A DNA stretch of 64,000 nt from NCBI RefSeq assembly GCF_963853765.1, contig NC_088855.1, forward strand, positions 22,072,001 to 22,136,000. The letters are read 5' to 3'. The DNA comes from Magallana gigas. Taxonomy: Eukaryota. Both the position numbers and the translations under genes were made by a program. How positions within the stretch are numbered: the first letter of the stretch is position 1; every line of letters begins with the position of its first letter. The notes under the pieces are model-generated. The model was not told the origin of the DNA. It saw only the letters and a program-made list of their open reading frames with translations, and made no database searches. Shown here piece by piece: positions 15,804 to 49,870 of the stretch.

Positions 15804-15837
<34 letters not shown>

Positions 15838-15934
15838 GAAGGATAATTGTGTTTGCCAGGGGGGGTCCGAGGCATATTTTCGTGATAATTTTACTATGTA
15901 AATTTAATAAATTTTCATTTTCCAGGGGGGGTCG

Positions 15935-15969
<35 letters not shown>

Positions 15970-17169
15970 ATTAGAGGTTGCTACAAAGCAATAAGTTTTC
16001 ATTCACAATTTTTATGAATATTCCAGTCCGAATTTCCTCTATCAGTATTCAAATTCCTACCCTTTTTGATTCAATTTTACAAAAAATAAATGATGATAAT
16101 ACTAAAAGATTTATAGCATTAAACTAGGTATGTTGACCTTACTCTGCATTCATAAAAGTTTTATGAGAGCAATGATCAAAATATTGTGATATGGCATCTT
16201 TTATCGTTTTTAAGCATTTTTCAATACTTTTGTAGTGCATGCCATTCGAATATCTAAACGAAAAAGAGAGATAATCCTGCAGAAAATATGCAAAATTATG
16301 TTGACTAACAAAGAAAATCCGAATTTTCTCTGTTTTGCTAAAAGTCCAACTTTTTTTTAGCCTAATTCCATAATAAAAAAAAATATATCGAATGGTTTGT
16401 CAATAATAATTCATTTCATGAATATTTTTAGTGTTTAGAACAAATTTTACTCATGACATTGAATTTTATAACAATCCGAATTTGAGAACTCAAACCCTGA
16501 GTAAACAACGTCCTTAATAAATAAAGAGATTGTTTATGAAGATACGCCGAACTCTTGTCATTGAGTCCTGCCTTACTTTTATAAATACACTGTAATACTG
16601 GACAGTTTTATCAGATGCACACTCACCAAGGTACACCGCTAATCCATCGTCATTTTTCATATCGAGTGGGTCGTTATCAAACTTCTCTGGTAAAAGAATC
16701 AAAACACCGCTTGCATTGTAGAAATAAATAACACCTCCATATTTTTCAGTTGCGTCATCATCTCTAGGAGACGAACCAAAGGCATTGAATATGTAATAGT
16801 CAGAACCATCTTCAACCTTGACCTCAACAATGACCTTGACCGGTACTTGCGTCTCAGTTGCATTTTTTATATCCGTGAAGGGCACGTAAAACTCGACCTT
16901 GTGATCATCTTGTGCCTTTGCTGTTATCCAATCACTTATGAATGAAGGTTCATACACTGTCATTCCATTCGCAAACCCTAAGAAGAAATGGATGCATGCA
17001 TTAATAAAAATCTTAAATTCATAACTTAACTAATTTGGTATCGAAAAACTGGAAACTTTAAATTTACTGAGTGCGTTTAAATACAATTTTTACAATAGTT
17101 GTCGTACATATTGTATTTATATTCACTTTGTAAATTCAAAATTTACATGTACATATATTAAAAATTATG

Positions 17170-25889: not shown

Positions 25890-26215
25890 TTAGCTTTTGT
25901 GAAAACGTCTATGATAGGAATGTCCATTTTGAAAAAAGTTTAACAATATGTACCGAATAGCTTTTAACATGTCCGGAATGATAATCAACCCAGCCAGCAC
26001 GATGAGAAATACTACCCAGACGGCACCAGAAGCATTCGTGGAAGGTCGGAAATCTTTAATGCAGATCTTCTTCCTTAAAGCCGCCGAAGTTTGATTCTTT
26101 AGAACCACCAATTCTTTCTGCATCTTTTCAATTTTCTGAATGAGCCTCACATCGCTAACGTTTGTGTATTTTGGTACGGTCACAAAATCACAAGGGCACA
26201 AACAATCACCGATAG
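25890..26215 (-). CDS. Gene A terminal coding exon: CxCxC, coiled-coil, juxtamembrane motif, TM (about 25977-26024), short cytoplasmic tail, stop
   Basis: acag acceptor; AIGDCLCPC...LIQKIEKMQKELVVLKNQTSAALRKKICIKDFRPSTNASGAVWVVFLIVLAGLIIIPDMLKAIRY...HKS then TAA at 25892-25890. Confidence 0.88.
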
Positions 26216-29200: not shown

Positions 29201-32200
29201 AGCGTAAGCAAAAAGACAAACAAATATTGTAAAGAAATCATAAATACCTAATACATGTTTAAATGAAGTAAAAAAAAATAACTGATAATTTTCTTAAAAC
29301 TGTTTTTGGTCAAATAAATTATCCAGTTTTGTTCTTAACTCTTGTTTATTATCATACATCCATCACCAGTTTAATGTAAAAAAAAATTATATATAATATA
29401 TATAAATAAATGAAATCGATTTGTTAACAAGTAATCTGCAATAAAGTACCCGAACATATAGGTGGTCCTCCGCTCCAGGTACCATTCAGCGTACAGACTC
29501 GACTCAGATTTCCAGACGTTACTTCAAAGTCTGTGTTACAACTATAAAGTAAGCTCCCATTCACCTTGTTGTCTATACTCTCCACCCTCCCATTTCCAGG
29601 GTCGGTTACATTTGGACAAAGGATTTCTGTTCAGTAAAAAAAAGGTAATTTAAACTGTAAATAACAACTCTTAATATACTAATATTGTCATGAATTGAAG
29701 CGACTTAAGAATTTAACCATAACACTTATGGAAATGCTCTAGGGTAGGCATTTATAATATGTCGGAATGAAGTATTAGAAGATATTACGATTGGTGACTA
29801 CAACGAGTGAACTCACCGGAACACACAGGTGGAGCTTCGGACCAACTTCCGGTGACGAGACATGTTATGTTTAAATCAAGTGATAATCTAAATCCCGCGT
29901 CACATGAAAAGGATGCAGTGCTATTAATAGGAACACCAGAAGATGAAGATATTACAACACTATATGTCACGTCACCGTTTTCGAAAGTTTGAATATCTGT
30001 ACAAAATATCTCTGTAAAAAGAAATAATAAAAAATTATGATGTATTTTCAATAATAAAAAAATCTGAAATCACCAGTGCTTCAACCAATTCCAAAGTTAG
30101 TCACCCAAATATTAACAATTACATCTTCCCAAATGGTTTAGATATAGCAAAAGTAATGATTCTTTCCTTCCCACTAAAAAAAAAGAGTACCACTACATAT
30201 TGCTGGTTCTCCACTCCAGGTTCCGTTCAGCTGACAGGTACGAGTCAAATCGCCCCCGGTATGATTGAATCCTGTGTCACATGAGTAAATTGCTTGACTG
30301 TTGATAGAGGTTTGTTCTGCGACAGCTTTTCCATTTAGCGGATGATATAGCCCCGGACAGAATATTTCTGTTGTTTAAAAAGACATTGAAAAAATGTTTG
30401 AATAGTATTTTCCTTTACACTATTGAATTAGACGGTTTTTATTAAAATTGTGCACTGAATACTAGCAAGAACAGTCTTTTAAAAAAATTGTTTGAAATGT
30501 GTGTGCAATTTTCTTTGCTAACACATCAACTGGATTTTTCATAAGATAAAGATAAGATAATATGATTGTATCAATTATTCAATGAAGTTACCAAAAGGCA
30601 GTAAAATAGCTAGATTTTAGCTATTTTGGAAAATATTTCACTCCAAAATATATTTCCGAGGATTTAAAATTATTAAAACCCAACGTTCACAATGACTTGC
30701 CAATGATTTTCCCAAACAGTGGCTTAAAGGAAAAGGACAGGTAATGAAAATTAAAACATAACGATATTCTTTCAAATAAGAAGTGGTATATAATGACATT
30801 TTTAATTGTAAATTAACAAACTGACTTAGTAAAGCGTAAAAAAGCATGTCATAAGAATTCCGATGGAAAACCGTGAGATCGTCAATCTTCACTGCGTACC
30901 CGAACAATTTGGCGGATCCCCGCTCCATGTACCGTCCAACAGGCACGTTCGATGTAGATTTCCGAACGTGTGTTCGAAACCATCAATACAAGAATATGTA
31001 AGAGTGCTATTAACAGAGTGATTGCTAATCACCATTTCGCTATTTGCTGAGGCATTGACGGGCGGGCAAAAGATTTCTGAAAGAAATGTAGAGACTGATT
31101 ATATATCTGAAATTGGTTAAAATGATCAAGCTGTCAATTTAAAACAGGATTGAACACGATAATCCTCAGCATAATTTGCGTGGCAGGTGTGAAAGTGAGG
31201 AAAATCGAATTTCCAAAATAAAATAAATCCGCATACAATGCAATTCGCAAATGGCGATGGTATGAGTTGGATAAAAATCATATACCATAACAAATCATGA
31301 AAGATTCTTTTTATCACAATGACATGTCTACAAAGGTTTGTTAAACCTTAATCTTTTCTGTAAAAGTTATGATCGTGAGCCGCACAATACATTTTCTGCA
31401 AGACGTCAACAACTTTACGCATGTAAAAAATGTTCCTTGATCATTTAACAAAGAAACGTTCATTATCGAACATATCAATTTATGAAAAAATGAATAAAGT
31501 GACCTTAAAGTAACAGTAAATGCCGTTTATGTACAACTCCACACTTTTCAACTGAAATTAATTATTTTTGTACTTATTCATTCTACGTCAATCAACCGCC
31601 TCAACCTATGTAATGTTTAAATATGACGTCACATGGAGTAAGCACACACAGTGTAATATCAAAAATTTATTACATGAGTGATATCCACCGTATAATGGGA
31701 TGAACATGTAATAAAAACAAATATTTGATGATTCCTAATAAACTCAAAGTTGCCATTAGAAGGTTTAGTTTGAGGATTATTCGATTTCGTTTGAGGTTTT
31801 TCTTTACACCCTGTTTCCACGATAAATATCCCCGATTGCATGCTTCAAAGTCCAACCATACAGACCCTACCTTAAAAAATTTCAATTGTTTTTTCTCTTT
31901 TGTTCGTGTAGTGATGCTTGCGCTTCAAAATAAATGGTCTCTTCGTGTTCGATGCAAAACTTACCGTTACACACTGGTGAGTCTGCGGACCAATCTCCGG
32001 TAATTAAACAGGTGATGGTTTCGTATGACGATAATGAAAATCCCGGCTGGCATGCAAAGAAAGCTGTTGTGTTGACGGAAATATTATGCGCTGCGTCTCT
32101 ATGGTACCCAACAATAACGTTATCTTGAACGGCGATCCATGGACAAAATATTTCTGAAAACATTTTTCAAAGTACCAGTTCAGTGTCCTGTGCATTTAAA

Positions 32201-35200
32201 ATTGGAAAAAAGCTCTAAAATTTAGTTTAATATCTTCTGAAATTTAGGCAATTTCTTTTGAAAATCCCAACTTTATCATAGAATCAAAATCCTGTCAGCA
32301 GTCAGAGAACAAAAAAAAAAAAACAATTCGTGTGATCATTCAGTCATTCAGAACATACTGTGCAATCATTAGAATTCGTTGTGGCTCAATTTTCATGGTA
32401 ATCGTTGCTAACCCTTTCCCCCACGAATTTACATCCTTGACGCAAGCAAATTAAGAAGGGGAAATTATTTTTCTGAAACTGAAAACCGATGCACTTACGA
32501 AAATACATCCCTACAAATAAGGAAAAGAGCACAATCCACGAAAATTGGCCCCCACAAATTTTAATGCCTCCACAGTATTATATCTTTTTCTATTTTATGG
32601 GTTCAGGTGTAGATGATTTTTGTGTCCGTTTTAAGGCAAACACGTGAGATTTCTTTAGGTTAGATACCTGAACACTCGGCCGATGTGCCAGTCCATGAAC
32701 CGTTAGGTGCACAGGTTCGTGTCAAACTTCCATCCGTCAAGGTAAATCCCGGATTACAGCTAAAAGTAGCTACCCCATCAATTAATGTTCCGCTTATATT
32801 AACAGCGCCATTGATTGGATCCAACAGTGAAGGACAACGAATTTCTTTAAACAAAGCAACATCAAACTGATTGAAAATGAAAGGTTAGAGTAGTCGATAA
32901 ATCTTTTCTAAAAACTCAAAAATCTTAAATAAACGACATAATACAACACATCTAGAGAGGATTTTTATTTTGACTTTCAAGGATAAAATTTGCTTTCTGC
33001 TAAAATAATCATAACAAGACTGGTACATATTATACATACAGTAAAAGAGAAAAAATGTTAGTTAAGCCGTATAGTAATGCATATTTTCAGCAATATCCAA
33101 ACAAGATAATGTGATCAGATTTCTTACCTGAACATGTCGGAAGAATACCACTCCACGTTCCGTTTGGGAAACACGTCCTGTTCAAATTTCCCGCCGAAAT
33201 ATTGAATCTTTCGTTACATGCATATTGTATGACCCCGTTCACTGATAAATTCTTTTCCAAAACAATTCCATTTGGCGGATCAATTTCATCTGGGCAGAGT
33301 GTTTCTGTAAAATGTGGGGTTATTTTTTTTCTTCAAAAATCATCATTAACAAAAAAAATATTCGTCTTTTTCTGCTAAATGGAACTATTCGATATCAAGG
33401 ATTTGAGTATTATGAGGTGATAATTTCGGTCGGGGCATGGTCAAATCCAATAAAGCTCGAAGGGTTTTATGATAGTTTTGACCACGCTCCGACCGAAATT
33501 ATCACCTCATAATATTCAAAGAATGATTTCTTATTACATGTACTTACATTTATATTATTCTGAATTTCTACACTTTAAAACAACATAAATTAAAGCCACT
33601 TCTTCTTGTAGCACGTGTGTTACAACGCACTTTGAAATTCTTTCCAAAGGGCGTTACATTTGGCACCAAGTCAACGCACTTTCAGTAAATTTTTTTCAAA
33701 GTGCGTTGATATCGTCGATATTATAAACTTTGAAAAAAAGATTTTTATTTTTTCAGGATTTAGTTGAAATAATTAATACTTTTATATGCAATAAATGACT
33801 GTATTAACCTTCTCTAGCTCAATGCGATATATTTAAAAAAGAACCCAAATACATACTCAGCTAACATGATAAACATTTTCTGGATTAGAATTATTTTGCT
33901 TTTCTCATAAGCTTACGTAGTTTGACAATTTACATGAGAGATTTGAATTATTCAAATAAGCAACTGCATTTTCCTTTTGTTAGGTATTCAGCAAATTTAC
34001 TTCTTATCTGGACCATTGGTTTATGCCAGAAACAAAACTGATTTATATATATTGATAATGGAGATCATTGTAAAACATATTTTAACTGGCTAATAAACAA
34101 ACATGATGAGAAAAAAAATATACATTAGTTATGTTTTTAAAAAACAACAACAATGTGATCATGATCTTTTGGAAGATCAATGCGAAATTAAAACTACCAC
34201 ATCCTAATGCTTATTTTTTCTTTAATAATAATACTATATTTGTCAATGTAACTTCTTTTTTTTTTTATAATAAAATGGTTTATTTGATTAGAATTTGAAA
34301 AGAAGGTTTATGCTAAAACACTTATAGATTGTTTAACATACATGCACCATTGGAGAAATTATTGTTTGACCAGCTCGTTTTTTCAATACCACTGTACGTA
34401 TTTAACAACAAAGCATATTTCTTTTTCCAATCTTAAATGTTTAATATTAGTGGCTGAATATCATGTTTTTAAAGGAAAAATGAGGGGCAAGAGATCTTCC
34501 TCCTGTAATCAGGTAAATGGTGTACTCGTAATTGACATGTATCTATTGTTAACTCCCACCCCCAAACTTGTTCTCGAAGAAGGTAAATGAGATTCACTAG
34601 ACTAGTGTTAACAAAAAACCTATCAACAAGTTAGAAATTCAATTTCATAATTTGTGATTTATACATATTTTTTGCGTTTTATGTCTCGATGCTAGAAAAT
34701 GTTGATGTACCTTCATAACGCACTTTAAAAAAAAAAAATTCAAAGTTGGTTATCTTGGTTCCAAATTTAACGCACTTTGAAAAAAATTTCCTGGTGCGTA
34801 ATTTTTTCAAAATGTGTTGCCACACACGTGCTTTGTATTACTACGCGGCGCAGCCAATACCGTTTACGGTTATGCTATAAGACACGCCCATTTGGTGTCG
34901 CTCATCTTTTATGAAATTATTGGGTTTAAGGCTTCAAAATTGATTCGTAATGTTATCACAATGATATGTAAATATATAGAAATAAATGCAATCATTTTTA
35001 CTTCATGCCGTGCTATGTAAATGTTATAAATGCACGTAACTTTACCGTGGAGAACATGCATATATACAGTGCTCAGGGTCATAAGTTACTAAAACCCTAC
35101 AACAGTTGACCTAAAATCGATTGTTTGAAGAGATACGAAATGTTGCGCTTAGTTGAATTTGCATCTCTATAGCATTGAATGATTCATTTTTGACGTCGTC

Positions 35201-38200
35201 GTGTCAATAACTGCCGTCAGGTGAGCAGACAAATTGAATAACGCGCATTAGCGCGTTATGATAATTTGTCTGCTCACCTGACGGCAGTTATTGACACGAC
35301 GACGTCAAAAATGAATCATTTAATGCTTATATTTACATTCCCTTACTGAAGAAATCAATTGTTTACTTAAATAAATCGATATAAAGTGCAGATCACGGAG
35401 GGAGTGAATAAGTAACAGCAGGAACAGCTGTTTTGTAAAACCGGTTTAAACTGGTTTTCACATAGACTGTTGGAATGAGATCGACGAGCATGAAAATATA
35501 ATCCATGATAAATAACTCTTGAAATGGTGCTTTAAACAATAAAGTCAACTTTTTTGTTGAATAATTATAAAACATGGTGTTTTTACAACATTCATGAAAT
35601 ACATTTTTTAACAAATAACATAGAAATCACTGTTTGAGAACTACTTATGTAAATTAATCGTAAATTCATACGCAGTGAATAGGTGTTGCATTTAGAGGCA
35701 TTTAAACGTCACGGAATTTAATGGAAAAACACAGTAGAATGTAAATATAAGGAAATAAGCGCCGCATTTTTGTTTGTAACTTCGTAATTGTCTCCCTTAT
35801 TTACTGGTCTTCAAACTTTATTAATTACATTCTCTCCGTATATAAAAGCTTTTACGATGCTTTCATTGAAACGTAGTCGTATTATTGTCATTCTGTACAA
35901 TATTTGGCTTCCTTTACAGGGCACAGATCTTTTATATGATGATGATGATGGTCAACGCTATGGTCAAATCGAATAAACCACAAAGATTAATAATGCATGC
36001 AAAATAATTACGATGAATACATATGCAGCCCATAGCTATAACTGGCCTTTTCCCATTCGGAAGAGAGAAACCCGATCAATTTATAGCACTTAATCATAGC
36101 CACCTCGTTAATAAAATATGAACACGGGGTTCTGATATTATCCTACCTATACACTGAGGTACATTGCTATTCCAGAGTGCGAGTAGATTACAGCGCGCAA
36201 CCGTATGGGTCTCGTTTTCAATGTGATATCCAAAGTTGCAGACGACAGCCTCATTCTCACATGGTTGTAATAAACTTGGGTTTAAGTATCCATTCATCAC
36301 AGCCAAATCTGTGGTGTTGCATGAATCTGTCAAATTGAAATAAAATACACTGTAGTAAATAAAAAGATTTTAGGTCAAAGCCCATCATACATTAGACATT
36401 TTTAAAATATATGAGAAGAATATTATAATAATTCCAAACACTGCAAGTTTCGCAAATGCTAGAGAATTTAACCAACTTTTTTAACTTGAACGAGCGTGAT
36501 GGACTTTATATGTTCGAGAGAGGGGAGCAAATATGGCATTGATGAAAATATACAAATTTCCACATGAAAACTACCTCAGGTAAAAGAAAACTGGAATAAA
36601 TCTGTTCTGCAGAAATCGGAGTTTATTTTTCAGTGTTTATAGATTTCTATTTGGTTTTAACCTGTTTTATTAATTTTAAAGTATTTTCATAGCATTTGTG
36701 CACACGATTCCGATAAAATTCCGATAAAATTTTAACAAAACTATCATATGATTTTAAAATCCATTGAGAATTTTTTTTTATAGGAAACCTACCTGTCTGA
36801 ATCAAATTCTAACAGAAAATACCTTTTTCCTATGGGAAGTATAATTTCCTATAGGATTTTCAGAAAATCAAATAGAATTTAAATACTTCCTATAGGAAAA
36901 TTATTTTTCCTATGGGAGTTATTATTCTACTATGGGATGTTTTTGAAAAATAAATATCTCACCTGTCAGGTGAGACACACTTAAAACAAATGTGGTCATA
37001 TATTCTCAAAAACTGATCCAATATTGGATGTATATGGATTTTTACGAAACTGCATCTTATGCGGGTACAAACGTGCCATCTTGGCACTGACATAATTATC
37101 TGGCACGTTAAATGTGTAATAAAAACGAATGGTTTATACCAAACCAATTAAATGCTTCATGTGAAGGTACATCCACCTGGATAAAGTTTGATATTTTTAA
37201 GCCTGAAATCAACCAGTGCTCTTCTTGCAGTCTATTCTATCAACATGTCATGAAAAGGTAAGCGATTTTCATCCATTAGATAAACCCTAATTTATCCTTG
37301 GTAGTGACATTCTTTTGTAATTTCATTACAATAATACAAAGATGTTTGTGCATTCAAATGAAAATTGTGTATCATCAATGAGATTATATTTCTTTTAAAA
37401 GCTTGTATCTGAGACAGTGTGTTCTATACTTACTTCTGGACATCAGTCCGAATACGTAGATGCCTATCTCCACGTCATTTGTTTGATGTTGTTCCTTGCC
37501 CCCTCCCCACGGTTCATCAATATCAAAGGTATACGATGTAGTTGTTGGTCTGACTCTCCAGACGAAGACTCCATACTGATTGTACCCAAATATCAACCCA
37601 CTGTATCTGCTTGGTTTGTCCGGGTTATAATCACCGGAAGTAACCACGGAACCAGCTCCATAAAACTGGAAACCGTGATTTGGACCGTTTAAAGGACTGA
37701 TCTGGAAAATTTAATATTTTAAAAAAAATGATCATATTTTCAATATCAAGTGTTTTATGCTGTGCCATATCAGTTTCCAAAATAGCACACCTTTCAAGAC
37801 ACTTTTTATCTCATAACCGACATTTTACATATTTCAAACTGAATCAATGGTATGAATTCATATCTTGAAGCTACGGCATTGATGACTGTTTAAATTTGTA
37901 CACAGAAAACGTATATATTGCTTTATACGATGATTGTCGGATATATAATGTTTTGTACAATTAATGCTTTTAGAAATAATTTAAAACTTTGAAAAGCACT
38001 AAGCTATGGTAAACCGCAATACACATTTGGTTGACTGAATATATTCCTCGTTTATTCGACGTATCAAATTTTGTTAAGAAATGAATTTAATTAATATTTA
38101 TTTGTTTTATACGATATAAAATGGTTTGGGGCAGTTTACGCTTTTTAAACTGCGAAGCGGTTTATAAAAAAGCATTAACTGTTTCAAACCATTTTATATC

Positions 38201-41200
38201 GTATAAAACTAATAAATATTGAATTCATTGCTCTTAAATATAATTTTTTTACTCTTCATTGTAGATAAAAAGGTCATTTAACCTTTAAAATGACGTAAAA
38301 TTGTACAAAATTCAAACGTAACGTTAGGCGTATTGATACGTTTTTGACGTTAGTCTTACTATGACGTAGGCAACATTCTTTATACAATATTTAATCATTT
38401 TTTAGCCAATCAGAAAGCGCGTTACAACCAGAGTTAAATTACGCGATACTATCGAATAATGATTATTTAATTTGATCTTCCTTGAAAATGAGATTAAATG
38501 TTTCTTTTCAAAAAAGAAAGCTGTATAGAAAAGTAGTCTATGACTTCTCTCCTTGTACAACATCTCAACAACAACAAAAACAACCTAACTGTAACAAGGA
38601 CAAGAAATTCCGTAGGATTTTTTGTGCCCGGAAATATCATCCTTGGAGTGTCCTGTGACGCGTCATTGATTGTAGTTCTTTCGTTCCAGGTCCATCGACA
38701 TCTGTTCGGGGCGTTATCAAAAGTCCAGGCCAGAACTCTAACAGCGGCTTCGTGAGAAACCAAGCGTTGTTTGTCTTGATAATGTCTATCACCCCATCCA
38801 TCTGCGGCACTTGTAATAGGATCTATGAAGAAAAAAAAATGTATGGTTTTTTTTCAACTTCCATAGATTAAGCGCTTGAAATTTATTTTAATAAATTCAA
38901 TAAGATTAAAATTATAAGAGTGAATAACTTCTAAATTCTGTTAAATTTTAAGTAACTAAATAGACACACAAAAACAAGTGGATTATTAAAATCTTACCAA
39001 TTACATGTACAATAAAATATTAGTAGACTGAAGACTTTATTACATTTTGTGACGGTACACATTGACAAATTGTAAATATTATTTTCAGTGACAAAGATGA
39101 AAATACCAAAATGATAAACAATAAGAAAAGTCTTACGATTTAATTTTACCCAGACTCTGACATGAGTTGTGTTGTACGCAAAAGCCAAGCCTCCTGCATC
39201 ACTACCACAGCGTAAACAAGCAGGCATTCCTTAAAATAAATGGACAGCTGTGGGCTCAAACATAACGAGGCTGGGCGATTAACTAACAAATTATCTATCT
39301 GATCATATTAAATCGTTTATGTGGATTTTTTCATCTACAATAAACTTTCAATTATTAAGGTTAAAAACCAATGGACTATATATGATTTAGGCCAAAAATA
39401 GCTCCCTAAAATAAATATCATCATTTTACTGTAATTCTTTGTTTTCTTTGTACAGATACGTATGTGATGTTTTTACATAACAAGTGCCCCTAATTTAGAA
39501 AAATGACATCGTAAAGACAACCTTTTTCCGCCATTTTTGCAATTTAAGCATAAAACAGCTTGTTTCCAAGTAGTTTATCTTTAAAAAAAAAAAAAAAGGA
39601 GCGCATGCTTGAAAAAACAAATAAATTCAATCAGAGATGTATCTAGCCAAGACTAAAAAGTGACCAAAAATGTTCCTTGTTTAAGCATACGCTCTATATT
39701 TCCCATTCATAAAAAGATAAGAAAAATGTAAATTTTTGACTGATTTCGATTAAATTATAGAAATAGCGTCACTTTTGACGTCATATACTGCCAGTGAGTG
39801 CGAATAAATCAAATAAATAGGTGAAAAATATTTTTATATCAACCCTTCTAAAAAATAACATAATTTATTGTACCCGAAACACTTTAAAAAATGGCGAATT
39901 ATGGGGGCGAAATTTATCTCATATTATATAAAGTTACCTTTAAATTTTAAATGTTTTCCTTTATCTTTATTATAATCTTCTAGTGAATAATATTAGAATG
40001 CTATATAATAATATTTTAATACTTTTATATCATTAAATTATATTATATCAGTTCATGGTATGTTTTGTCATATTGATTTCCTGTTAAATTATATAACATC
40101 ACAGTGAGTTAATACACATGAAAGTATGCCTATGTATTGTTAAATCATAATATACTGTATATCAAAACATAAAGCATATCATTTTTATAGTATGTTTTAT
40201 TACCATTTCCTTCAGAAACCAGCCCGCGAAGTTCATCAAATCTCCCTGGAGGTTTCGCTTGTACCACTACCATATCAGGAGCTGACGTCATATTAGTAAA
40301 GGGAATTTCTAAATAGGTTATTGTTTCCATCGGTTCTGAATTTAAATAAAACCACGCTATTTGATCAGTTGGTGGTATTAGAAAGAGTCAAATGATAATT
40401 TAAACTCCATATCATAATAACTGTTATAAAGCATGTCAAAAGTCAAAAGTTATATCAGTTAAAGTATTCTGATTATTTTTAATTTTATCATGATAACTAT
40501 CTAAATAAATGTATATTTTTATACATGTATATTACTATCAAATTTTGATGATAAATTTTATCCCGCTTGCTTGTGATTGTCGCTGACGTTAATTGGTTCC
40601 CTATACTTTTTTAACACAAAAGGAAATGACGTCATATAAAAACAATGTATGCAAAATTATGGATTTCGTGACAATAGTGAGAAACATTCAATAGAAATAT
40701 CTTGGATTTTTTGGCAATAAGGTTGCAATCATATTATTCTTTATTTAAGCATAGGTTTTTTTTTTCTTTAATGAATATTTTGACGAAAGGGATTAGATAA
40801 GGCAACTCGTTTCATGTCTGACCTCGCACTGATATAACAACAGTAAGCAATGACTCTTACGATCTGTTGTTGCTGTAGACATGGTCGTCAATGTATTCAG
40901 GTTATACTGAAAACCAGAATCAAAATCTGGAGGCATGTCATTTCGTCGCCACATTTTGACTCGAACAAAGGCGTCGGTATATTCTCTTTTAATAGACTGT
41001 TCTCTATTCGATAGCGGATGATACCACCTGTCGACTGTACCTACAATGGATTAGTGTAAAATCAGAAGAATTCGTTGTTTGGTCTGAACATATTTCATCG
41101 TAATATATTACTACGGGACTGGTTACAAATTCTGTAAACTATGAAACCCTCTACCGAGAAGTCGTTTTAGTAAAGAAATTCACAAGCGCGTTTAATGTAA

Positions 41201-44200
41201 TACATAATGTAATAATGTAATAATAATGTAATACAGTTTGCAATCTTTCCGACTAACCATTCTTCTTTAACAATGGCTAACGTCGAACATTTCTGAAAAT
41301 CATCAAAATAGTCATATAAAAAATGTATTGTCTTTGCATGGTCTCAAACCTGTAATAAAACTTTGGATATTATTCCATTTGATGTTTCCGTGTTGGTATC
41401 TTTTCTTTTCACTAAAAAAAAACTTTTAAGGCACACTCTTTAACGTCCGTGTAATGACAGTCACGTGCACGTATTCATTATTGGTCGACTTTTCTCTTAT
41501 AATAGCATGGACAAAATTTCCTTTCGAAATGATGCGTATCAATTTCAATTTCATTTGTTAATACCTAATAAAAAACAGAGGCATATTACGTATATACACA
41601 TAAGTTAATTATTCTATGGTCTGATATAGGTGTTTGAGTTGTAAAGTATTTCATAATTCTCACCGGCTTTTTAATTATTAAGAGAGAATTTCGTATGTTG
41701 TAAAAAAAAATACGTTGCATCGGTAACAAATAAGTTGGAAAGTCAATAAACTGTCTGTAAATATGAAGTTTTTTCATAAGTGAAAGATCGTATTTCATTG
41801 TTTCCTTGTTCATGCTTTTTTCAAATTAAGATCTAGAGTCTCAGAATGTATTTGTATGGTAAGATTCAGTTGATGTTAAACACTGTCGAACATGTGTTTT
41901 AAAATATATAGGTTTTCTGTCTTTTGCCATAAATTTTTTTGTATTTTTAGTGGTGGTTGATTTTTCTTTTTTTTTTAACTGTTTATATTTTTGGCAGTAG
42001 TGAGTATAAACTGTTCGAAATACCTACATGTGTTCTTCAACACTGTTAACCATCAACAAAAAGTCATATATTTTGCATCAAAAGAATGTCATCAAAAGCA
42101 TGTTGATATTTTTGATATCACTATAGCATTGAATCATTATTTTTTTTTTAAGTGCATAACTGCAGCGGTGTGTGCATATAAATTGAGTAACGCGCGCTAG
42201 CGTCCGAATCAAATCATGGTTTAATGCTTATATTTACATTTTTTTAACTTCTTGCCTTGTGTGCAAACGTGATTTATACCTTAAAATTTCTATCTTATCA
42301 TAAGGATAGGTTCAAATAAATGGAAGAACCAGAATAAGAGCCGCCAGCGTGAACTTTGATTTTCACTTGTGACGTTGCAGTTTACAGTGTTCAACGTTTA
42401 TGACGTCATAATAAAACTAGTCATTTTAACCTTTGAGTACCCTGTGTGTGTTACAGTGTTATAACTGCCGTAGCTTTCAACACACTTTACAAGCAAAAAA
42501 TATGTGGAATTTAAATACATACATGTATATGGTATTTGGAATGCAGTATCTGTCTTGCAACGCAAATGAGAAAATTATAAATTCGAGCCAAAATTTTGAT
42601 TGAAAAACCTAGTTTAAGAACATATTATGTAATAATGTTTTGAATGAACATCGTAGAAATGTCAAAGAGTAAAGATTGAATAAAATGTTGGAGTAAATAA
42701 TTATGTTCATGGTACGGCTGAAATCGTTAACGTCAGATGTGACCTACAAATACATAGGTATTAATTAGGACCCGCTTGCTGTGGACACCCTGTAGTGATC
42801 AGTCTTGTCCGTCCGTCTTTACGTTCGGCTGTCCGTCCGAATCGCTTGTCCGGAGATTTCTTCTCTCTCCTTGGCCCAATCTGGCTCATACCTCACCCGC
42901 AGAGTGTCTTTGCGTAAAGGGTGTGCAGTGACCTTAAATTATGTTTCTAGATCTAAGATTAGGCCATGATGATAGAATTACAGTGACCATGAACTAAGTC
43001 AATGTATAGGTCAAAGTGCTTACCCTGGCTCAGATTCTCAGATTCAACAAAAATGCCTGTTTTTAAGGGGTAATGAGATTGAATTAGAAGTTTTATGCCA
43101 GCTGGAAAATGTCTAAGTTTTAGGTCAAGGTCAAAGCTAAATTCTATGAAATTCTTTTCATTTTATTGTCCATTATTTAAGCAGGACCCTTTGAGATGGT
43201 CACCATCTCAATAGTGTCTAGTTACGTATATGTTTTTATTACGGATTTGTATTTTGTATTATATTGCACACTTGTACATAAAGTATTTACTTGGAGCAAA
43301 CGTTGATTTTTAAAATTGAATCGCAAAATTCTCTCATAAATCCTAGCATTGAAAAAATAATTTGTTTCCGATAACCATGTATTGCTAAGGACCTAGTGAC
43401 ATTTTGCATCCGTCTTTGGTGCACTTTTTGTAAAATTTCAAATACATCATATATAGATAGATCATTGCTTAAAGAATTTATACAGTTAACAACTTTTATT
43501 ATTGATGCATTTCACCTGTAAGGTGAGAGATTTACCTTCAAAAATTAAATTCCTACGGAAAAATCTTTTTCTATAGTAAAACACATTTTCCAAAATGAAA
43601 TTTGAAATTTAAAACTGAAATAGAAAAACTTCCAAAGGCAATTTTAATTACGATAAGATTTGAGCAAAACTCCATAGGGGTTTTAAATTCAGACTGGAAA
43701 CTGTGATTTCCTGAAAGAAATATGCCCGCTGTCTGAAGGAAAACTATTATCGTTTAAAATATACCTTTCAAAAATCCCTACAGGATTTTAAAAACACCCT
43801 GAAGGAAAATTATTTCCCGTATTGAAATTATTCTTTCCAGGTGGATAGTATTCTTTAAAGGGAATTTTCTCATCTGTCAAGTGAGATTCACAAAAACAAA
43901 AGTGGTTTTGAAAATAACTCTCTATAGTCTTTCCCAATTAATTGTTTTCGTCACTTTTTGACAATTTTTAACGAAATTAAATATACATGTCACTTAAGTA
44001 CCATCAAAATCGATGAAAGGAAAAATAGATTCCTCTATTGATTTCTTTTATGACACGTCATCTGCTAATACCCGAAGAAATTCACATGATCGAAAACGAA
44101 TTACTTAGATCAATAATTAGAAATGTTGACAGTTTTTCTCCATTCGAAAGTACTTGTAACACCTCTGACAGAATTTGTAATGCTATCATCCAGGTTACTT

Positions 44201-47200
44201 TCATATCGTTTGCAATGCAAAATCCCCGTAGACTCTTTACTTTTAGCCTTGTATTGAAACCTTACAAGCTAGAGCGACGTTTCAAAGAGAAATTTTGAGA
44301 AAAAATATTATTTTATTTAATGAACATCATTTGAGCCCTGAGATATTTATGAATATTTTATAATTTAAGAAAATAGAAAAGAGTACTAGTAATGGTCTAT
44401 CATTTGGTATAAAAAAAAAATTTAAAAGCGAACATGTACTTGATGGTGTAATGCAGGTGATCTATGAGCCCTTTTACGAAAGAGCCATGTTCATAACGTA
44501 GATATTCTGATGGTCATATTTTCTACATAATGCAGCGTGTTTTAGAAAATGGATTGAACCTGACTGATAGCACAAATATCTTTACTTACACTACGGTAAT
44601 TAATAAATTCAAGTAACTTAAAAAGTTTGTCCTAACTAAGAAATCAGTTGTAAAACAAAAGTTTAAGAAAAGTGGCAGATTCGCTGGTCTTGGTTCTTTT
44701 CTCAAATTTGTCAACCTGATTACAAGGTAATAATTTGAGATATAAAGAGCAATGCAGCAAATAATAGTTCATTTTTGGGAGTTGATTTTAATCAACTCTC
44801 CTATGCAGTTACTCTGGCAAAACGAAAGTGAAACAGTGTTTGGACCTAAGCACAAATCATCACCGCTGACAAGACTAAGTTCTTGAAAATAATAGAAAAA
44901 AATAGATGTAATGTATGCTGAAACATTGTATTTCAAGGAAACTTATCTATAAACACTTTGAAAATAGTCAAATTTTATATACTACGAACAATTTAGATAT
45001 TTTTGTAGTCCCATGTATTCCTACGCCAGAGTTAATATAGTCTCGTTCAACCAGACGCTCGGCTGTCTCCGTAAATCTGCGACAAGCAGAGAGGGGGCTT
45101 TCTTGCTTGTTGGATATTAACGGAGACAGCCGAGTGTCTAGTTTAACGAGACTAGAGTTCGATATCAATAGTGCTTGGATCCATACAATTTTTAGAATTG
45201 TTTTGATAACTAATACATACTAGTAGTTGAAATCTATCTTTAAATATTACACAACATGATTCATATGGGGTTTCTTGAAATTCTTGAAGGAAAAGTCATA
45301 TTATAACTTCATATTATAAAAAAGTGCGTAATTCAAATACAAACTAGAAACTAATTGCCATGCAAGATAAATTGATTTTAAATTAAATGATAATCGATAA
45401 AATCAACTCCCGTCAGTACTTCAGTACTTTGATTTGTATATGAATGTACATGTATATTACTTTGTTAACGTAAAAGGAATGACAAAGTAGATTACATATA
45501 AACTTAAATTTTAGAGAGATCGCATTATACATTTATGAGAGTATTTTTTGTTACATAATTACGAAACCATTGAATGTATTAAAGCTTTTGCAGTAAATGA
45601 TACTCAATTTCTTTTCTTTAGCTTTAGGTTAACAAATCATCACATTCTAGAATCGCTGATCTGGTTGGCTTGACATGAATTGCAAATAATTTCTTCTCTG
45701 GATTTGATTATTGTTTTGCCTATCAGTTACAAATGGATTAAGGCGATTGTTGTTTTATAAATATATTTATTTTGTCACAATAAATTTAAATGGTCTTCAC
45801 AACAAATATTCAATCTAAAATATGATATATACCACCATTTAAAGATATTAGAGAGTATTAAGTCACATGGACGCGTTTAATTAATCAGTTAATCAGTCAA
45901 TCAATTAATTTATCAGATTTCATGTCAATGAATACATCATTCAATTAAGCCTCAGAAACAAAACAAAAAAGATTCCCTTTTAATTCGATACGGACTTACC
46001 GAGATAGACCGTTTTCCCGTCGTCTTTCTTTATATCAAGTGGATCGTTCTCAAACTTCTCGGGTAAAAAGATCAGAACACCGCTTGCATTGTAGAAATAA
46101 ATAACACCTCCATATTTTTCAGTTGCGTCATCATCTCTAGGAGACGAACCAAAGGCGTTGAATATGTAATAGTCATCGCCATCTTCAACCTTGACCTCCA
46201 CAATGACCTTGACCGGTAAATGGGTCTCAGTTGCGTTCTCTACATCCGTGAAGGGCACGTAAAACTCGACCTTGTGATCATCTTGTGCCTTTGCTGTTAT
46301 CCATGTACTTAAGAATGAAGGTTCATACACTGTCGTTCCATATCCAAACCCTGCTAAGTGAAAGAACTTTGGAATTTGAATTGGTCATAAATGTCACTCA
46401 AATCTATCCCTTAAAAGAAGTTTTTGACATAATGATAAATTAACATTCATATACACATGTATATGCATTTAAGGTTGTTCACAAGATATATAAATTTTCC
46501 TTAAATTCAAATTTTCTGAAACTCTTCCATTTTGATTAATGTAATGATATCTGTAAATGTCTAAAAAAAAAAAAAAAAAAAAAAAGGTAACCAACTTCGC
46601 CTTATTTTCTATACACGAATTTTAACTTACCATTCTAATCTTCTTTCAGGGGAGTGTTAATTGAAATAGACATTGTCAGAATTTGCATCTCCAGAAGGTT
46701 GCTTTTTCAGATATAACAAATATTTGTGCTGCTATTTATAAAGAAGACACCTATTTGATAGTGAGCTGTACTGAAATATATTCAAGCTGGTAAAACAGTA
46801 AACTCTGATAAAATATTAAGTAAAAAGGTGCATGTAATTACATATACCTTTTATCTAAAACAAAAATTGCAACGTTAAAGATCTCCGAAAATAAATAGCA
46901 TAATTTAAATGCAACGAAATTTAACAGATAATGAACATTTATCCATGAGTATTTTAATTGATTTGGGTTTTAAAATGTTTGTCATGGGTGAAAATTTGAG
47001 TTGAAAAATGTTTGATAAAACTACATACAGTGTAATAATGTTTGGTGTTTGACCTTTATATATGACCTTTGAAATTCGATTTGCATATACTTTTAACACT
47101 AGTGATGGCAATATTTAAATAATTAAAGCCCGGGTCTTTACTGTAATAGAAACCCGAGCCAATGATAGAAAGTTGGCTAATTTGCACAACAATCGAATAA

Positions 47201-49870
47201 TTACCAATGAAATGTAGCTCCTTAAAGCCGCTTGGTCCGCTTTTTTGCCAAAACATTTCTGAAATCTATCTCATTTCCTTTATTTATAGCGAATGTCAAA
47301 TTAAAGTTGTAAGACAATCATACTCGTCTTGACTTCGGAGTTGACTCATAATAAGGAGCAAATTACCTAATACAATGCCCTTTGAAAATTTGATTTGTAA
47401 TCAAATTTTGTATATTTTATTTTCCCTTTAAGATATGGCTTAACTGTTGAAGAACTAACTGCAATGCCTATTACTATACATAATTATAATAAGTAAAACA
47501 ATCGTTTAAAGGCATACATAAAAACTGATTTAAAATCGAACCAAGATCGTTATATTAGCTTACAGACAGAGTAATGCTATTCTTCGTGCATTTGAGATAA
47601 TCATGAATGTCTTGTATTTTCTATCTAAATATGAGTAATACGATTACAAATAAAAAAAATGTTCATATTCTCCTTGATATATGAGCAAATCTATGTAGTG
47701 ATATAATTGGTATAGACAGAAGGATAATTATATCAACTCTACCCACATTGTCCTTGGTCTGCCCTCCTTAAATCTGAATATTTATATCCCATTAATAAAT
47801 TTGTGCTTAAACTAATATGGCCGAAGTTTCCCCAGACAATATCAAAAGTATTGATTGACATGTGATATTAAACATATTGATGTCCCCTATTTTGATTGCA
47901 CAATTTAAATCATCATTTTACATCATCCGGAATATAATTCGTCTTTACAAGGACATATCGTAAGCGATAGTCTCATGGAACTTTTATTCATTTAATTCGA
48001 AAGATGTTCGATACTGAATTTTGATAATGATCAAGTGGGCCTCTGGCACCCGAGATGAAGTACATGTAAATCTAGAAGGTCTTTGCTGAGATAAAACCTC
48101 AACTCTGTGAAGGTATAATATTTCAAAAATAAACATTGAGAAAAAACTTTGAAAGCGTTTTAGTATTTTATTTCACTGTTATAATTGTTTCTTCATATTA
48201 ATATGTACTTAGTCTTTTTTTTTTAGATTTTTGAAGTAGTAATTTACACGCTGAAAACGTTTGATCCGCATATAGGTACAGTATGCTTTGCAAGACTTTT
48301 ATTTTAGTAAATTAAATATAAATGGTGTTCTGTAGCAAGCTGGCTACGAAATCGAAGTATACAAAGAAAGAAAAGAAAGTATAAAAAGGAAGTAAAGTTT
48401 TGATAAGACTTCATTTTTTTAAAGGAATAGATTTACTGAAATGTATTTCTTAAAAATCCCAATGCAGAGCATTTTTCCACAAGGAGATCAATAAAGCCTA
48501 AAAATGACTATGACCGTCAAGTTCTCTTAAAGCATTGTTCGTGATCAGTCACACGATGTTACTTTTTTTAAACACAGCAGTAGTTTCCCTGACAATAATT
48601 AGAAAACGTAAATCGGCAAAAGAATCGAAGTAATGAATATTTAAAATATTTTGCAAACTATTCTAACAACGTTCTTGTCTTTTCTCCCATAAAACAAAGC
48701 GTATTTGTGTTGGTTTTATTTTTGTTTTAAATAACAAGTCAGTCACAGCATATTAGAGGCATGTTAACAAGTTAACCTAGTTGCTTTAAACAGAGCTGTG
48801 ACGTACGCCTGTGGTCTGTCTATTTCGTTATCGACCATTTAGCCTGACGTGGCTCATTGAAAGGTTTCGCTTTTGAAAACAGCGCATATTTTTGCTTGAG
48901 AACAATGTCATTTTTAACTTGTACTTTGATGCAAAAGGTAGATAGGTACATCAGACCAAAACTCTACGATCTTGTTGAAATGGCTCTCATATGCAAAGAA
49001 AAGTTGTACCTATTAGCAAAGACTAAATCTTGTTCGGTTTCATTGCACATTATGATTTTAAATATTACAATGTCCTCCGGGTATAACGAGCTCGGATATT
49101 ACGAGGCACTGCTTACAACGAGATGATTGTGTGGTCCCAAATTATCTCTTAATTATTTCCTTTTTTATAAAATCCGGATACAACGAGATCGTTTATAACA
49201 GGACCTCTTATATTACGAGGTGACAATTTGTGCCCGTTAATGATGCGGTATCAGAAAGCATAATTTCAATATCAAACCTGCAAGAAAGTTTAGCATATTA
49301 AAATTCAAGCAAAGGGTCAATAGTCCGCTAAAACTTTTTAAGATTTCTGAGTCCAAATGTAGGGGCCTATACGCTTTATGTTTGAATTTATATATATCAT
49401 GTGTCCGTACAGAAAAGATTTTCTTAAACAATACCATGTATATTGTACAAAAGTTTATCTTGATAAGAATAAATTATATCGTAGATTTATATTTTATTAA
49501 CTGTTAACTATTTACTTACTGTAATTAGCCTTTGAGCTATACCTAAAGATTACTCATATAAGGGTTTTTTTATGTCGTAGGTACCTTATGGTTTTTGTTT
49601 AATTTCTGAGAGCAACTGAAATATTGGAACTGATAGCTAAATAATAAATTCAAATATCTCTTTTGCATTCTAGTCGCATGTTCGAGATCATCAAAAATAT
49701 TTTCGCTTTACCAGAAAAATAATCTTTTTCAACTATTATATTAAAAAAGTATTCATTCCCTACGGTTAAAGATTACCCGATACTTTCATCATTTTACAAC
49801 CAGAGCACATGCACTTACCAAACTGTATGAAAATCCACATGAATACACATTTGAATCGCACGTTTGGCAT
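25890..49870 (-). CDS. Gene A (complete, 19 coding exons, about 1229 aa): type I membrane protein with signal peptide, 3x unassigned beta-rich repeat, 11 sushi/CCP modules, coiled-coil, TM and short tail
   Basis: Hand-built join, complement of 49819-49870, 46000-46350, 40861-41040, 40204-40335, 39137-39229, 38590-38822, 37434-37701, 36147-36326, 33128-33304, 32668-32844, 31965-32153, 30900-31076, 30191-30367, 29817-30011, 29450-29626, 28360-28587, 27189-27389, 26493-26669, 25890-26215. All introns are GT-AG, phases are compatible, and the total is 3690 nt, open from ATG to TAA. Confidence 0.85.
26493..26669 (-). CDS. Gene A exon 18: sushi/CCP S11
   Basis: 177 nt, phase 1-1; EIYCPDLETPPNS...FVCNKGYQQTNGSLQQKCLATGKWSGIELVCK. 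Absent from the ORF track. Confidence 0.92.
27189..27389 (-). CDS. Gene A exon 17: sushi/CCP S10
   Basis: 201 nt, phase 1-1; EIFCPPL...FSCKPGFRLNDSSSLLCQIDGTWNGTLPNCS. Absent from the ORF track. Confidence 0.92.
28360..28587 (-). CDS. Gene A exon 16: sushi/CCP S9 with a long inserted loop
   Basis: 228 nt, phase 1-1; DITCLALPFPDNG-(insert)-GTQASYACNPGF...DLTRTCLNNGTWDGNSVTCD. Confidence 0.92.
29450..29626 (-). CDS. Gene A exon 15: sushi/CCP S8
   Basis: 177 nt, phase 1-1; EILCPNVTDPGNG...YSCNTDFEVTSGNLSRVCTLNGTWSGGPPICS. Absent from the ORF track. Confidence 0.92.
29817..30011 (-). CDS. Gene A exon 14: sushi/CCP S7
   Basis: 195 nt, phase 1-1; EIFCTDIQTFENG...FSCDAGFRLSLDLNITCLVTGSWSEAPPVCS. 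Confidence 0.92.
30191..30367 (-). CDS. Gene A exon 13: sushi/CCP S6
   Basis: 177 nt, phase 1-1; EIFCPGLYHPLNG...YSCDTGFNHTGGDLTRTCQLNGTWSGEPAICS. Absent from the ORF track. Confidence 0.92.
30900..31076 (-). CDS. Gene A exon 12: sushi/CCP S5
   Basis: 177 nt, phase 1-1; EIFCPPVNASANSEMVISNHSVNSTLTYSCIDGFEHTFGNLHRTCLLDGTWSGDPPNCS. Absent from the ORF track. Confidence 0.9.
31965..32153 (-). CDS. Gene A exon 11: sushi/CCP S4
   Basis: 189 nt, phase 1-1; EIFCPW...FACQPGFSLSSYETITCLITGDWSADSPVCN. Confidence 0.92.
32668..32844 (-). CDS. Gene A exon 10: sushi/CCP S3
   Basis: 177 nt, phase 1-1; EIRCPSLLDPING...FSCNPGF...RTCAPNGSWTGTSAECS. Confidence 0.92.
33128..33304 (-). CDS. Gene A exon 9: sushi/CCP S2
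   Basis: 177 nt, phase 1-1; ETLCPDEIDPPNG...YACNERFNISAGNLNRTCFPNGTWSGILPTCS. Absent from the ORF track. Confidence 0.92.
33408..33535. mobile_element. Short palindromic (fold-back) element
   Basis: 38-bp arms tattatgaggtgataatttcggtcgg..ggtcaaa and tttgacc..ccgaccgaaattatcacctcataata, followed by a ttcaaagaatgatt.cttatt end also seen at about 60266. Confidence 0.7.
33610..34832. mobile_element. 1.2-kb non-autonomous TIR DNA transposon with 4-bp TSD
   Basis: TIR agcacgtgtgt ... acacacgtgct, subterminal aacgcacttt repeats at both ends, ttgt duplicated on both sides; no transposase ORF. Confidence 0.8.
35168..35748. mobile_element. 581-bp element with a 143-bp near-perfect palindrome (copy 1)
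   Basis: Perfect 58-bp arms at 35178-35235 and 35263-35320; the whole block is repeated at 54188-54768. Confidence 0.8.
36147..36326 (-). CDS. Gene A exon 8: atypical sushi/CCP module S1 (5 Cys)
   Basis: 180 nt, phase 1-1; SCNTT...NGYL...PCE...VCNFGY...RC...W...PQC. Confidence 0.85.
37434..37701 (-). CDS. Gene A exon 7: head repeat 3
   Basis: 268 nt, phase 0-1; ISPLNGPNHGFQFYGAGSVVTSGDYNPD..SRYSGLIFGYNQYGVFVW...PWGGG; same length as 11264-11531. Confidence 0.9.
38093..38450. mobile_element. Fold-back MITE-like element
   Basis: About 36-bp inverted arms aatattta.ttgttttatacgatataaaatggtttg and caaaccattttatatcgtataaaact.ataaatatt (38093-38220). The right boundary is approximate. Confidence 0.6.
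38590..38822 (-). CDS. Gene A exon 6: head repeat 2/3 junction
   Basis: 233 nt, phase 1-0; PITSAADGWG...VRVLAWTFDN...CRWTWN...PRMIFP...LVLVT; donor gttagg. Confidence 0.85.
39137..39229 (-). CDS. Gene A exon 5: head repeat 2 with CxxC
   Basis: 93 nt, phase 1-1; GMPACLRCGSDAGGLAFAYNTTHVRVWVK; homologous to 12512-12604. Confidence 0.88.
40204..40335 (-). CDS. Gene A exon 4: head repeat 2
   Basis: 132 nt, phase 1-1; TYLEIPFTNMTSAPDMVVVQAKP...GLVSEGN; homologous to 12714-12839. Confidence 0.88.
40861..41040 (-). CDS. Gene A exon 3: end of head repeat 1 and start of repeat 2
   Basis: 180 nt, phase 1-1; GTVDRWYHPLSN...DAFVRVKMWRRNDMPPDFDSGFQY; homologous to 13217-13381. Absent from the ORF track. 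Confidence 0.88.
42765..43223 (+). mobile_element. HINE/pearl(CvA)-like element
   Basis: GTCC tetranucleotide repeats near the 5' end, 3' palindrome gagatggtcaccatctc and ctagtt terminus. Confidence 0.75.
43510..43890. mobile_element. Degenerate MITE
   Basis: Imperfect terminal IR cacctgtaaggtgaga / tctcatctgtcaagtg; a related terminus tctcacctgtcaggtgag lies at about 36957-36975. Confidence 0.5.
44777..45434. mobile_element. HINE/Helentron-like family 2 (copy 2)
   Basis: Subterminal IR gggagttgatttt / aaaatcaactccc, 3' hairpin agtact-tc-agtact, internal palindromic core at about 45040-45155. Confidence 0.75.
46000..46350 (-). CDS. Gene A exon 2: head repeat 1 (most of it)
   Basis: 351 nt, cag acceptor and gtaagt donor; encodes ...PVKVIVEVKV...FGSSPRDDDATEKYGGVIYFYNASGV...; 86% aa identity to 16627-16977. 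Confidence 0.9.
49819..49870 (-). CDS. Gene A exon 1 (coding part): signal peptide MPNVRFKCVFMWIFIQF
   Basis: aaaaaATGCC start context, 52 nt then G|gtaagt donor, acceptor cctgcag at 49918. Same length, phase and start context as gene B exon 1. Splices in frame to GFGYG-TTVYEP. Confidence 0.75.

What the first reader, a model, noticed from the sequence alone, without database searches (positions are those of the whole stretch)
37434..46350. Unassigned roughly 125-145 aa repeat present three times in the N-terminal head
Seen: exons 2-7 of both genes encode three internal repeats sharing P-x-[FY]-x-[ST]... P-x2-V-x-V-x-[VA] ... [FG]-x2-G-x-G ... [YA]-[GS]-G-[LV]-x-[FY]-x-Y-N-x3-V-x-[VIL]-[WL] ... 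W-G ... V-x-[VI]-[RQY]-[VI]-x2-[WFL]. Examples are KYGGVIYFYNASGV, AGGLAFAYNTTHVRVW and RYSGLIFGYNQYGVFVW. Alternating hydrophobic strands suggest a beta-sandwich. The repeats are not delimited by exons, so the triplication is much older than the CCP exon shuffling. I cannot match it to a named domain. Three repeats at the membrane-distal tip suggest a pseudo-trimeric ligand- or carbohydrate-binding head (inference).
Basis: partly seen in the sequence, partly recalled or inferred. Interest (0 to 1): 0.8.

Follow-up and report, generated by a model that had tools for sequence, protein, structure and literature searches.

The report
Three-repeat trimer-like head of oyster receptor
Two neighbouring oyster genes encode membrane proteins whose outer tip has three copies of a small beta-sandwich domain that bacteria and phages carry once per chain at the end of trimeric fibres or enzymes, so the animal version looks like a ready-made trimer in one chain; the family is unannotated and its ligand is unknown.

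Summary
Exons 2-7 of gene A (46353-37434, minus strand) and of its paralogue B (16977-11264) encode a 412-419 aa head. It holds three copies of a ~120-aa repeat, which score 90, 50 and 56 bits against one repeat HMM. Four of the five junctions between these exons are seen in RNA contigs.

The repeat belongs to a real family with no Pfam model. A 1.84-billion-protein search gave 140 cluster representatives, from bivalves, a sponge, Nematostella and hemichordates. Of the members of 330 aa or more, 70 of 80 carry exactly three copies, and copy n matches copy n across phyla.

About 30 bacterial proteins carry one copy at their extreme C-terminus, behind fibre-like or collagen-like shafts.

Best reading: a covalent pseudo-trimer ("single-chain trimer") of a fibre-tip or trimerisation domain, displayed on a CCP stalk. 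Ligand binding is inferred, not shown.

The parts
49820..49870 (-). Gene A exon 1: start codon and signal peptide (MPNVRFKCVFMWIFIQF)
   Evidence: tblastn of P0142 residues 1-17, 100% identity
46000..46353 (-). Gene A exon 2: most of repeat 1, including the RDDD...KYGGVIYFYN motif
   Evidence: Splice sites and translation; query of the big search
40861..41040 (-). Gene A exon 3: end of repeat 1 (VRVKMW) and start of repeat 2 (PPDFDSGF); the repeat boundary is near 40949-40933
   Evidence: junction 40335|40861 in RNA contigs
40204..40335 (-). Gene A exon 4: repeat 2 strands (YLEIPF..PDMVVVQAKP)
39137..39229 (-). Gene A exon 5: repeat 2 core (AGGLAFAYNTTHVRVW)
38590..38822 (-). Gene A exon 6: end of repeat 2 (DGWG..VRVLAW) and start of repeat 3; the boundary is near 38725-38703
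37434..37701 (-). Gene A exon 7: repeat 3 core (RYSGLIFGYNQYGVFVW..PWGGG..IGIYVFG)
25893..36351 (-). Gene A remainder: CCP/sushi exons, then a last exon (26216-25893) with a Cys-rich motif, coiled coil and transmembrane anchor
   Evidence: tblastn of P0142 residues 422-965; Sushi Pfam hits in orthologues
11264..16977 (-). Gene B head, exons 2-7 (16977-16627, 13381-13217, 12839-12714, 12604-12512, 12133-11898, 11531-11264): the paralogous three-repeat head, 71% aa identity to A

Best explanation
Architecture (shown). Each gene encodes a type I membrane protein. After the signal peptide come three tandem ~120-140-aa beta-sandwich domains of one family, then a stalk of CCP modules, a Cys-rich and coiled-coil segment, and a transmembrane anchor.

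Domain identity (shown at fold level, sub-threshold at sequence level). The domain is a distant relative of the C-terminal trimerisation domain of the Pseudomonas aeruginosa pseudaminidase PA2794 (Pfam PF22432). It is a closer relative of an unannotated domain that sits once, at the very C-terminus, on bacterial secreted fibre-like and collagen-like proteins.

Mechanism (inferred). In bacteria and phages three chains would each bring one copy to form a trimeric tip. In animals the three copies are fused in one chain and pack into a compact pseudo-threefold head, a natural 'single-chain trimer'. The three copies have diverged in a position-specific way, so the head is asymmetric.

Function (inferred from position and analogy only). 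The head is a recognition module held far from the membrane. It would bind a ligand, glycan or protein, on a microbe, cell or matrix.
For: The repeats are real and form a family:
- The three repeats score 90, 50 and 56 bits against one repeat HMM.
- The big search gave 140 family representatives at E<1e-3.
- 70 of 80 members of 330 aa or more have exactly three copies, one has six, and the median linker is about 4 aa.
- Copy n is the best match of copy n in other proteins in 65, 70 and 64 of 73 cases.

Structure:
- Head model: pLDDT 92.2, pTM 0.93, with three units of the same strand order.
- Foldseek gives probability 0.99 for 2w38 and 3h6j.

Sequence link to PA2794_C:
- Family profile against PDB sequences: 2w38 at E 0.0015.
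- PF22432 is the Pfam family matched by most members, but only 3 of 111, all sub-threshold.
- hhalign against a phage PF22432 domain: probability 91.7%, E 7.6e-7, collinear end to end at relaxed settings.
- The PA2794 domain is used as a trimerisation domain in engineered proteins (PMC9147764).

Bacterial single-copy form:
- About 30 bacterial-type proteins carry one copy each. All but two end one residue after it.
- It follows a signal peptide plus an 'INYQG' shaft, or Gly-X-Y runs of up to 105 residues.

Selection and expression:
- dN/dS between heads A and B is 0.29.
- The gene is expressed and spliced.
Against: - No window exon or family member reaches Pfam's threshold for PF22432.
- The confident part of the sequence match to PA2794_C covers only the first ~40 residues.
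- The model is of a 93%-identical proxy (P0142), not the window's own protein.
- Some eukaryotic members combine three copies with collagen repeats (P0035, P0011), so one chain does not always replace a trimer.
- No binding data exist for any member.
Confidence: 0.7

Rival explanations
1. Each repeat is an H-type lectin domain, as in Helix pomatia agglutinin, discoidin and SLL-2. The head would be a GalNAc-type sugar binder with sites at the repeat interfaces.
Confidence: 0.08
2. The three repeats are ordinary tandem Ig-like modules strung in a row as a rod extension of the CCP stalk. There is no pseudo-trimer.
Against: - The copy number is fixed at three (70 of 80 long members) or six, not variable.
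- Linkers are about 4 aa.
- A pTM of 0.93 for 417 residues implies a fixed mutual arrangement.
- Whole-span matches are to single-chain trimers.
- Bacterial relatives sit behind collagen triple helices.
Confidence: 0.12
3. The head is a C1q/TNF-type jelly-roll trimer encoded in one chain.
Against: No TNF or C1q chain is among the top 50 matches of the single repeat. The repeat has 7 strands, not a 10-strand jelly roll. There is no C1q or TNF Pfam hit. The resemblance lies in the quaternary arrangement, not in the protomer fold.
Confidence: 0.05

Closest known systems
C-terminal trimerisation domain of the Pseudomonas aeruginosa pseudaminidase PA2794 (PDB 2w38, 3h6j; Pfam PF22432 PA2794-like_C), also found on a sialidase-like protein of Pseudomonas phage PP21
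- The sequence motifs are collinear: PDFxSxW, HGLxxxPxxVxV, xVRV and the terminal VRVxAW.
   Different: - Sequence similarity is below Pfam's threshold.
- The known domain occurs once, at the C-terminus of an enzyme, and forms a homotrimer from three chains.
- Here there are three diverged copies in one chain, at the N-terminus of an animal membrane protein.
Unannotated bacterial secreted fibre-like and collagen-like proteins with one C-terminal copy (for example P0133, P0184 from a Gammaproteobacteria MAG, P0169 from Candidatus Kentrum, and L004:3416-4363 in a Desulfobacteraceae MAG)
   Same: They belong to the same HMM family at 148-169 bits per copy. They are 55-60% identical to some eukaryotic copies and 30-35% to the oyster copies.
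   Different: They carry a single copy, and all but two end one residue after it. The copy sits behind a shaft or a Gly-X-Y triple-helix region. None has been characterised.
Engineered single-chain TNF-family and C1q heads (PDB 4zch, 5hzf)
   Same: Three beta-sandwich protomers joined by short linkers into one compact trimer-like globule. These are the best whole-span structural matches.
PCSK9 C-terminal domain, built of resistin-like modules (Pfam PCSK9_C1 and PCSK9_C3; PMC5403857 citing Hampton 2007)
   Same: An analogous precedent: a domain that forms a trimeric head, repeated within one animal chain. That there are three modules in pseudo-threefold symmetry is my own knowledge, not tested here. 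In the bacterial locus L004 the neighbouring gene has the same shaft but a resistin/PCSK9_C-like head.
   Different: An unrelated, disulfide-rich fold.
H-type lectins (Helix pomatia agglutinin 2ccv, SLL-2 3wmp)
   Same: Small trimer-forming beta-sandwiches found in invertebrates.

Membership tests
PA2794-like_C (Pfam PF22432) | Match to the Pfam HMM above the gathering score (27 bits) | tested here: not met
   No hit on the six window exons. Three of 111 family repeats matched, with a best E of 0.0086. A phage member scores 137 bits for comparison.
PA2794-like_C (Pfam PF22432) | Fold of the 2w38/3h6j C-terminal domain | tested here: met
PA2794-like_C (Pfam PF22432) | Detectable sequence homology at profile level | tested here: inconclusive
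   Profile against PDB sequences: E 0.0015. hhalign probability 91.7%, E 7.6e-7, confident over 36 columns and collinear over 102 columns at mact 0.05. A narrower profile gave only E 0.11.
PA2794-like_C (Pfam PF22432) | Single C-terminal copy that forms a homotrimer from three chains | tested here: not met
   The window proteins have three N-terminal copies in one chain. The oligomeric state cannot be tested with these tools.
Three-repeat head family (unnamed; defined here by the HMM) | Three consecutive copies of the ~120-aa repeat with position-specific motifs | tested here: met
   Head A scores 90, 50 and 56 bits; head B scores 90, 58 and 55 bits. In the tree, each oyster A repeat groups with the same-numbered repeat of the other oysters.
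H-type lectin (Pfam PF09458) | Pfam HMM match, or a clear fold match to HPA or discoidin | tested here: not met
C1q/TNF superfamily | 10-strand jelly-roll protomer | tested here: not met
   The repeat has 7 strands. No C1q or TNF chain is in the top 50 for the single repeat. Only the three-protomer arrangement resembles it.

The most novel reading that the evidence does not exclude
An ancient, still unnamed extracellular module of animals, from sponge to hemichordate and bivalve. It would be a covalent pseudo-trimer made by triplicating a bacterial fibre-tip or trimerisation domain. Some bacterial copies are 55-60% identical to eukaryotic ones, which hints at transfer between domains of life. 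The three copies have diverged in a position-specific way, which would turn a symmetric trimer tip into a single asymmetric recognition surface. This surface is used at the tip of many adhesion- and receptor-type architectures (CCP, cadherin, EGF, LamG, pentraxin, VWD).
Probability: 0.4. Interest if true: 0.7.

Novelty: new variant of a known kind. Interest (0 to 1): 0.6.

Why it matters
It gives a name and a structural logic to a domain that is currently blank in Pfam. The domain occurs in at least 140 protein clusters (50% identity) from animal and other eukaryote-like sources and from bacteria.

It offers a natural example of the 'single-chain trimer' design that protein engineers build by hand for TNF and C1q.

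It links animal surface receptors to the tips of bacterial and phage fibres, which are classic receptor-binding devices. That makes the head of these oyster CCP proteins a concrete candidate for microbe or glycan recognition, which can be tested directly.

Tried and rejected
Searches that gave nothing useful:
- Pfam on the six exon translations: no hit.
- PDB sequence search with single exons: only compositionally driven DARPin hits and noise.
- Foldseek of the whole head against PDB: nothing meaningful, TM below 0.2. This is expected for a three-domain chain whose relatives are separate chains.
- PHROGs and NCBIfam on 111 repeats: only scattered single hits.
- BFVD: uncharacterised tailed-phage proteins and tail-fibre proteins, at probability up to 0.99 but E of 0.02 or more. 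This is suggestive only.

Attempts to assemble a PA2794_C family alignment failed:
- The 38-aa fragment was too short for the search for related loci.
- The phage PP21 domain found no other phage or plasmid record.
- It found no genome locus either.
The profile-profile test therefore rests on one phage sequence.

Other points:
- A literature search for six LOC identifiers of family members found nothing.
- The window's own spliced head could not be handed to the fold tools, because no reference exists for a spliced sequence. I used the 92.8%-identical P0142:19-435 instead.
- The repeat tree is too poorly resolved at depth to place the bacterial copies or to decide the direction of any transfer.
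- C1q/TNF and H-type lectin membership were considered and rejected (see the membership test).
Full report
**What is in the window.** The window is AT-rich eukaryotic DNA with about 31% GC. Two tandem paralogous genes lie on the minus strand. GT-AG sites with consistent phases define six head exons in each gene. In gene A they are 46353-46000, 41040-40861, 40335-40204, 39229-39137, 38822-38590 and 37701-37434. In gene B they are 16977-16627, 13381-13217, 12839-12714, 12604-12512, 12133-11898 and 11531-11264. The spliced heads are 419 and 412 aa and contain no stop codon.

**Support for the gene model.** A 965-aa database protein, P0142, is 92.8% identical to head A and agrees at all five junctions between head exons. 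It is collinear with gene A from a signal-peptide exon at 49870-49820 to the last exon at 26216-25893. RNA contigs from three runs show junctions 37701|38590, 38822|39137, 39229|40204 and 40335|40861. The closest named relatives are Saccostrea and Crassostrea proteins at 57-65% identity, and several runs that hold the DNA are labelled oyster. I therefore take the source to be an oyster and did not identify it further.

**The repeat is real.** Direct repeat-to-repeat alignments within one protein are weak, at z 2-6. I searched 1.84 billion proteins with exon 2 and found 140 representatives at E<1e-3, many with three matched stretches. A repeat HMM iterated on these converged at 120 positions. 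It matches the three repeats of head A at 90, 50 and 56 bits and of head B at 90, 58 and 55 bits. The repeat boundaries fall inside exons 3 and 6, so exons do not delimit the repeats. dN/dS between heads A and B is 0.29.

**The family.** Named members come from oysters, scallops and a clam, from the sponge Oscarella lobularis, from Nematostella vectensis, and from the hemichordates Ptychodera and Glandiceps. All are annotated 'uncharacterized' or named after other domains.
- Two long intron-less contigs look like other eukaryotes.
- Pfam finds nothing on the repeat region.
- Pfam does find Sushi, cadherin, TIG, EGF and laminin-EGF, F5/8C, LamG, ILEI, fibrinogen-C, pentaxin, VWD, D8C and, weakly, collagen elsewhere in these proteins.
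- The repeat region is therefore a mobile extracellular module.
- Among members of 330 aa or more, 70 of 80 have exactly three copies and one has six. Linkers are about 4 aa.
- The best match of repeat 1, 2 or 3 in another protein is the same-numbered repeat in 65, 70 and 64 of 73 cases. The triplication therefore predates most of the family's divergence.
- One protein, P0004, has three nearly identical copies that form their own clade. This indicates either a separate triplication or homogenisation.

**Structure.** The result was pLDDT 92.2 and pTM 0.93, with three units of the same strand order. A single repeat, folded with 111 sequences, gave pLDDT 87.3 and a 7-strand beta-sandwich.
- Foldseek gives probability 0.99 for 2w38 and 3h6j.
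- These whole-head scores are weak, but all three matches are three-protomer globules in one chain.
- Together with pTM 0.93, this points to a compact pseudo-trimer. I could not measure the symmetry because model coordinates are not exposed.

**Sequence link to PA2794_C.**
- The family profile hits 2w38 in PDB sequence space at E 0.0015. The motif match is striking: PDFESDW...SHGLQRSPRRVVVEF, and a terminal YYRVRAW.
- PF22432 is the Pfam family hit by most repeats, though only 3 of 111 and all sub-threshold.
- A phage PP21 protein has a bona fide PF22432 domain at 137 bits. It aligns to the repeat profile with hhalign probability 91.7% and E 7.6e-7.
- At relaxed settings that alignment is collinear over 102 columns.
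- The PA2794 domain is used as a trimerisation domain in engineered proteins (PMC9147764). PF22432 is also reported on Pseudomonas prophage tail proteins (bioRxiv 10.1101/2025.01.20.633936).

**Bacterial single-copy form.** A genome scan with the most consensus-like member found a Desulfobacteraceae MAG contig. It holds a 315-aa ORF with a signal peptide, a fibre-like shaft, and one copy of the domain ending one residue before the stop codon.
- The adjacent gene has a nearly identical shaft but a resistin/PCSK9_C-like head.
- A word search found about 30 further proteins of 187-496 aa with exactly one copy each. All but two end one residue after the domain.
- They include ones from Candidatus Kentrum and a Gammaproteobacteria MAG.
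- Two have long Gly-X-Y runs directly upstream, of 48 and 105 residues.
- From general knowledge, collagen-like runs form three-chain helices. The single-copy domain is therefore expected to sit as a trimer at the fibre tip.
- The same search returned eukaryote-type proteins with three copies (P0160, P0161, P0163, P0035).
- The pattern of one copy per chain behind a trimeric shaft, and three copies per chain where there is none, is the strongest comparative argument for the single-chain-trimer reading.
- Some eukaryotic members combine three copies with collagen repeats, so the rule is not absolute.

**How it most likely works.**
- Shown: the domain family, the three-copy architecture, the beta-sandwich fold, the fold-level relation to PA2794_C, the membrane-distal position, expression, and purifying selection.
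- Inferred: the three copies pack around a pseudo-threefold axis. Because they have diverged position-specifically (RDDD...YGG in repeat 1, DGWG in repeat 2, GxNxGF and WGxG in repeat 3), the head offers an asymmetric surface.
- Inferred by analogy only, with fibre tips and with C1q and TNF heads: it binds a ligand.

**My probabilities.**

| Claim | Probability |
|---|---|
| Homology to PA2794_C | 0.85 |
| Compact pseudo-trimer | 0.75 |
| Ligand-binding head rather than a purely structural cap | 0.5 |
| Carbohydrate as the ligand | 0.25 |

**Novelty.** The library's Pfam copy has no model for the repeat, and searches of the paper library found no description of it. It is a new variant of a known kind of domain, a trimerisation or fibre-tip beta-sandwich, in a new three-in-one-chain arrangement in animals.

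Noticed in passing
window 46000-46353 versus 16627-16977: Exon 2 of the two paralogues has dS 0.31 and 89% nucleotide identity. The other head exons have dS 0.7-1.05. This suggests gene conversion of exon 2 between genes A and B.
   Followed up: partly
window 38086-38478 and 39396-39919: Stretches in introns 6 and 4 of gene A reach depths in the thousands in RNA contigs, with many loose ends. They are probably copies of an expressed repeat or transposon and not part of this gene.
   Followed up: no
window 44806-45449 versus 8-687: A ~700-bp stretch in intron 2 of gene A is 69% identical to the start of the window, and an inverted piece (45040-45152) matches 381-275. This is a dispersed repeat.
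   Followed up: no
window 40861-40900 (exon 3 of gene A): The 93%-identical database protein P0142 lacks six residues here (NTLTTMSTATTDQP versus NTATADQS). This is an indel in the linker-like start of repeat 2.
   Followed up: no
window 30177-30374 and 28356-28464: CCP-like open frames in gene A that were not among the >80%-identity tblastn hits of P0142. They may be extra or alternatively used CCP exons.
   Followed up: no
L004:2482-3282 and L004:3416-4363 (Desulfobacteraceae MAG): Two adjacent bacterial genes share a nearly identical signal peptide and ~150-aa shaft but carry different C-terminal heads. One is resistin/PCSK9_C-like and the other is the domain studied here. This looks like head swapping on one fibre scaffold.
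   Followed up: partly
P0004 (L003:971-7807): A 2278-aa protein on an intron-less contig, next to a kinase/EH-domain gene. Its three repeats are almost identical to each other, which indicates recent triplication or concerted evolution.
   Followed up: partly
   Followed up: no
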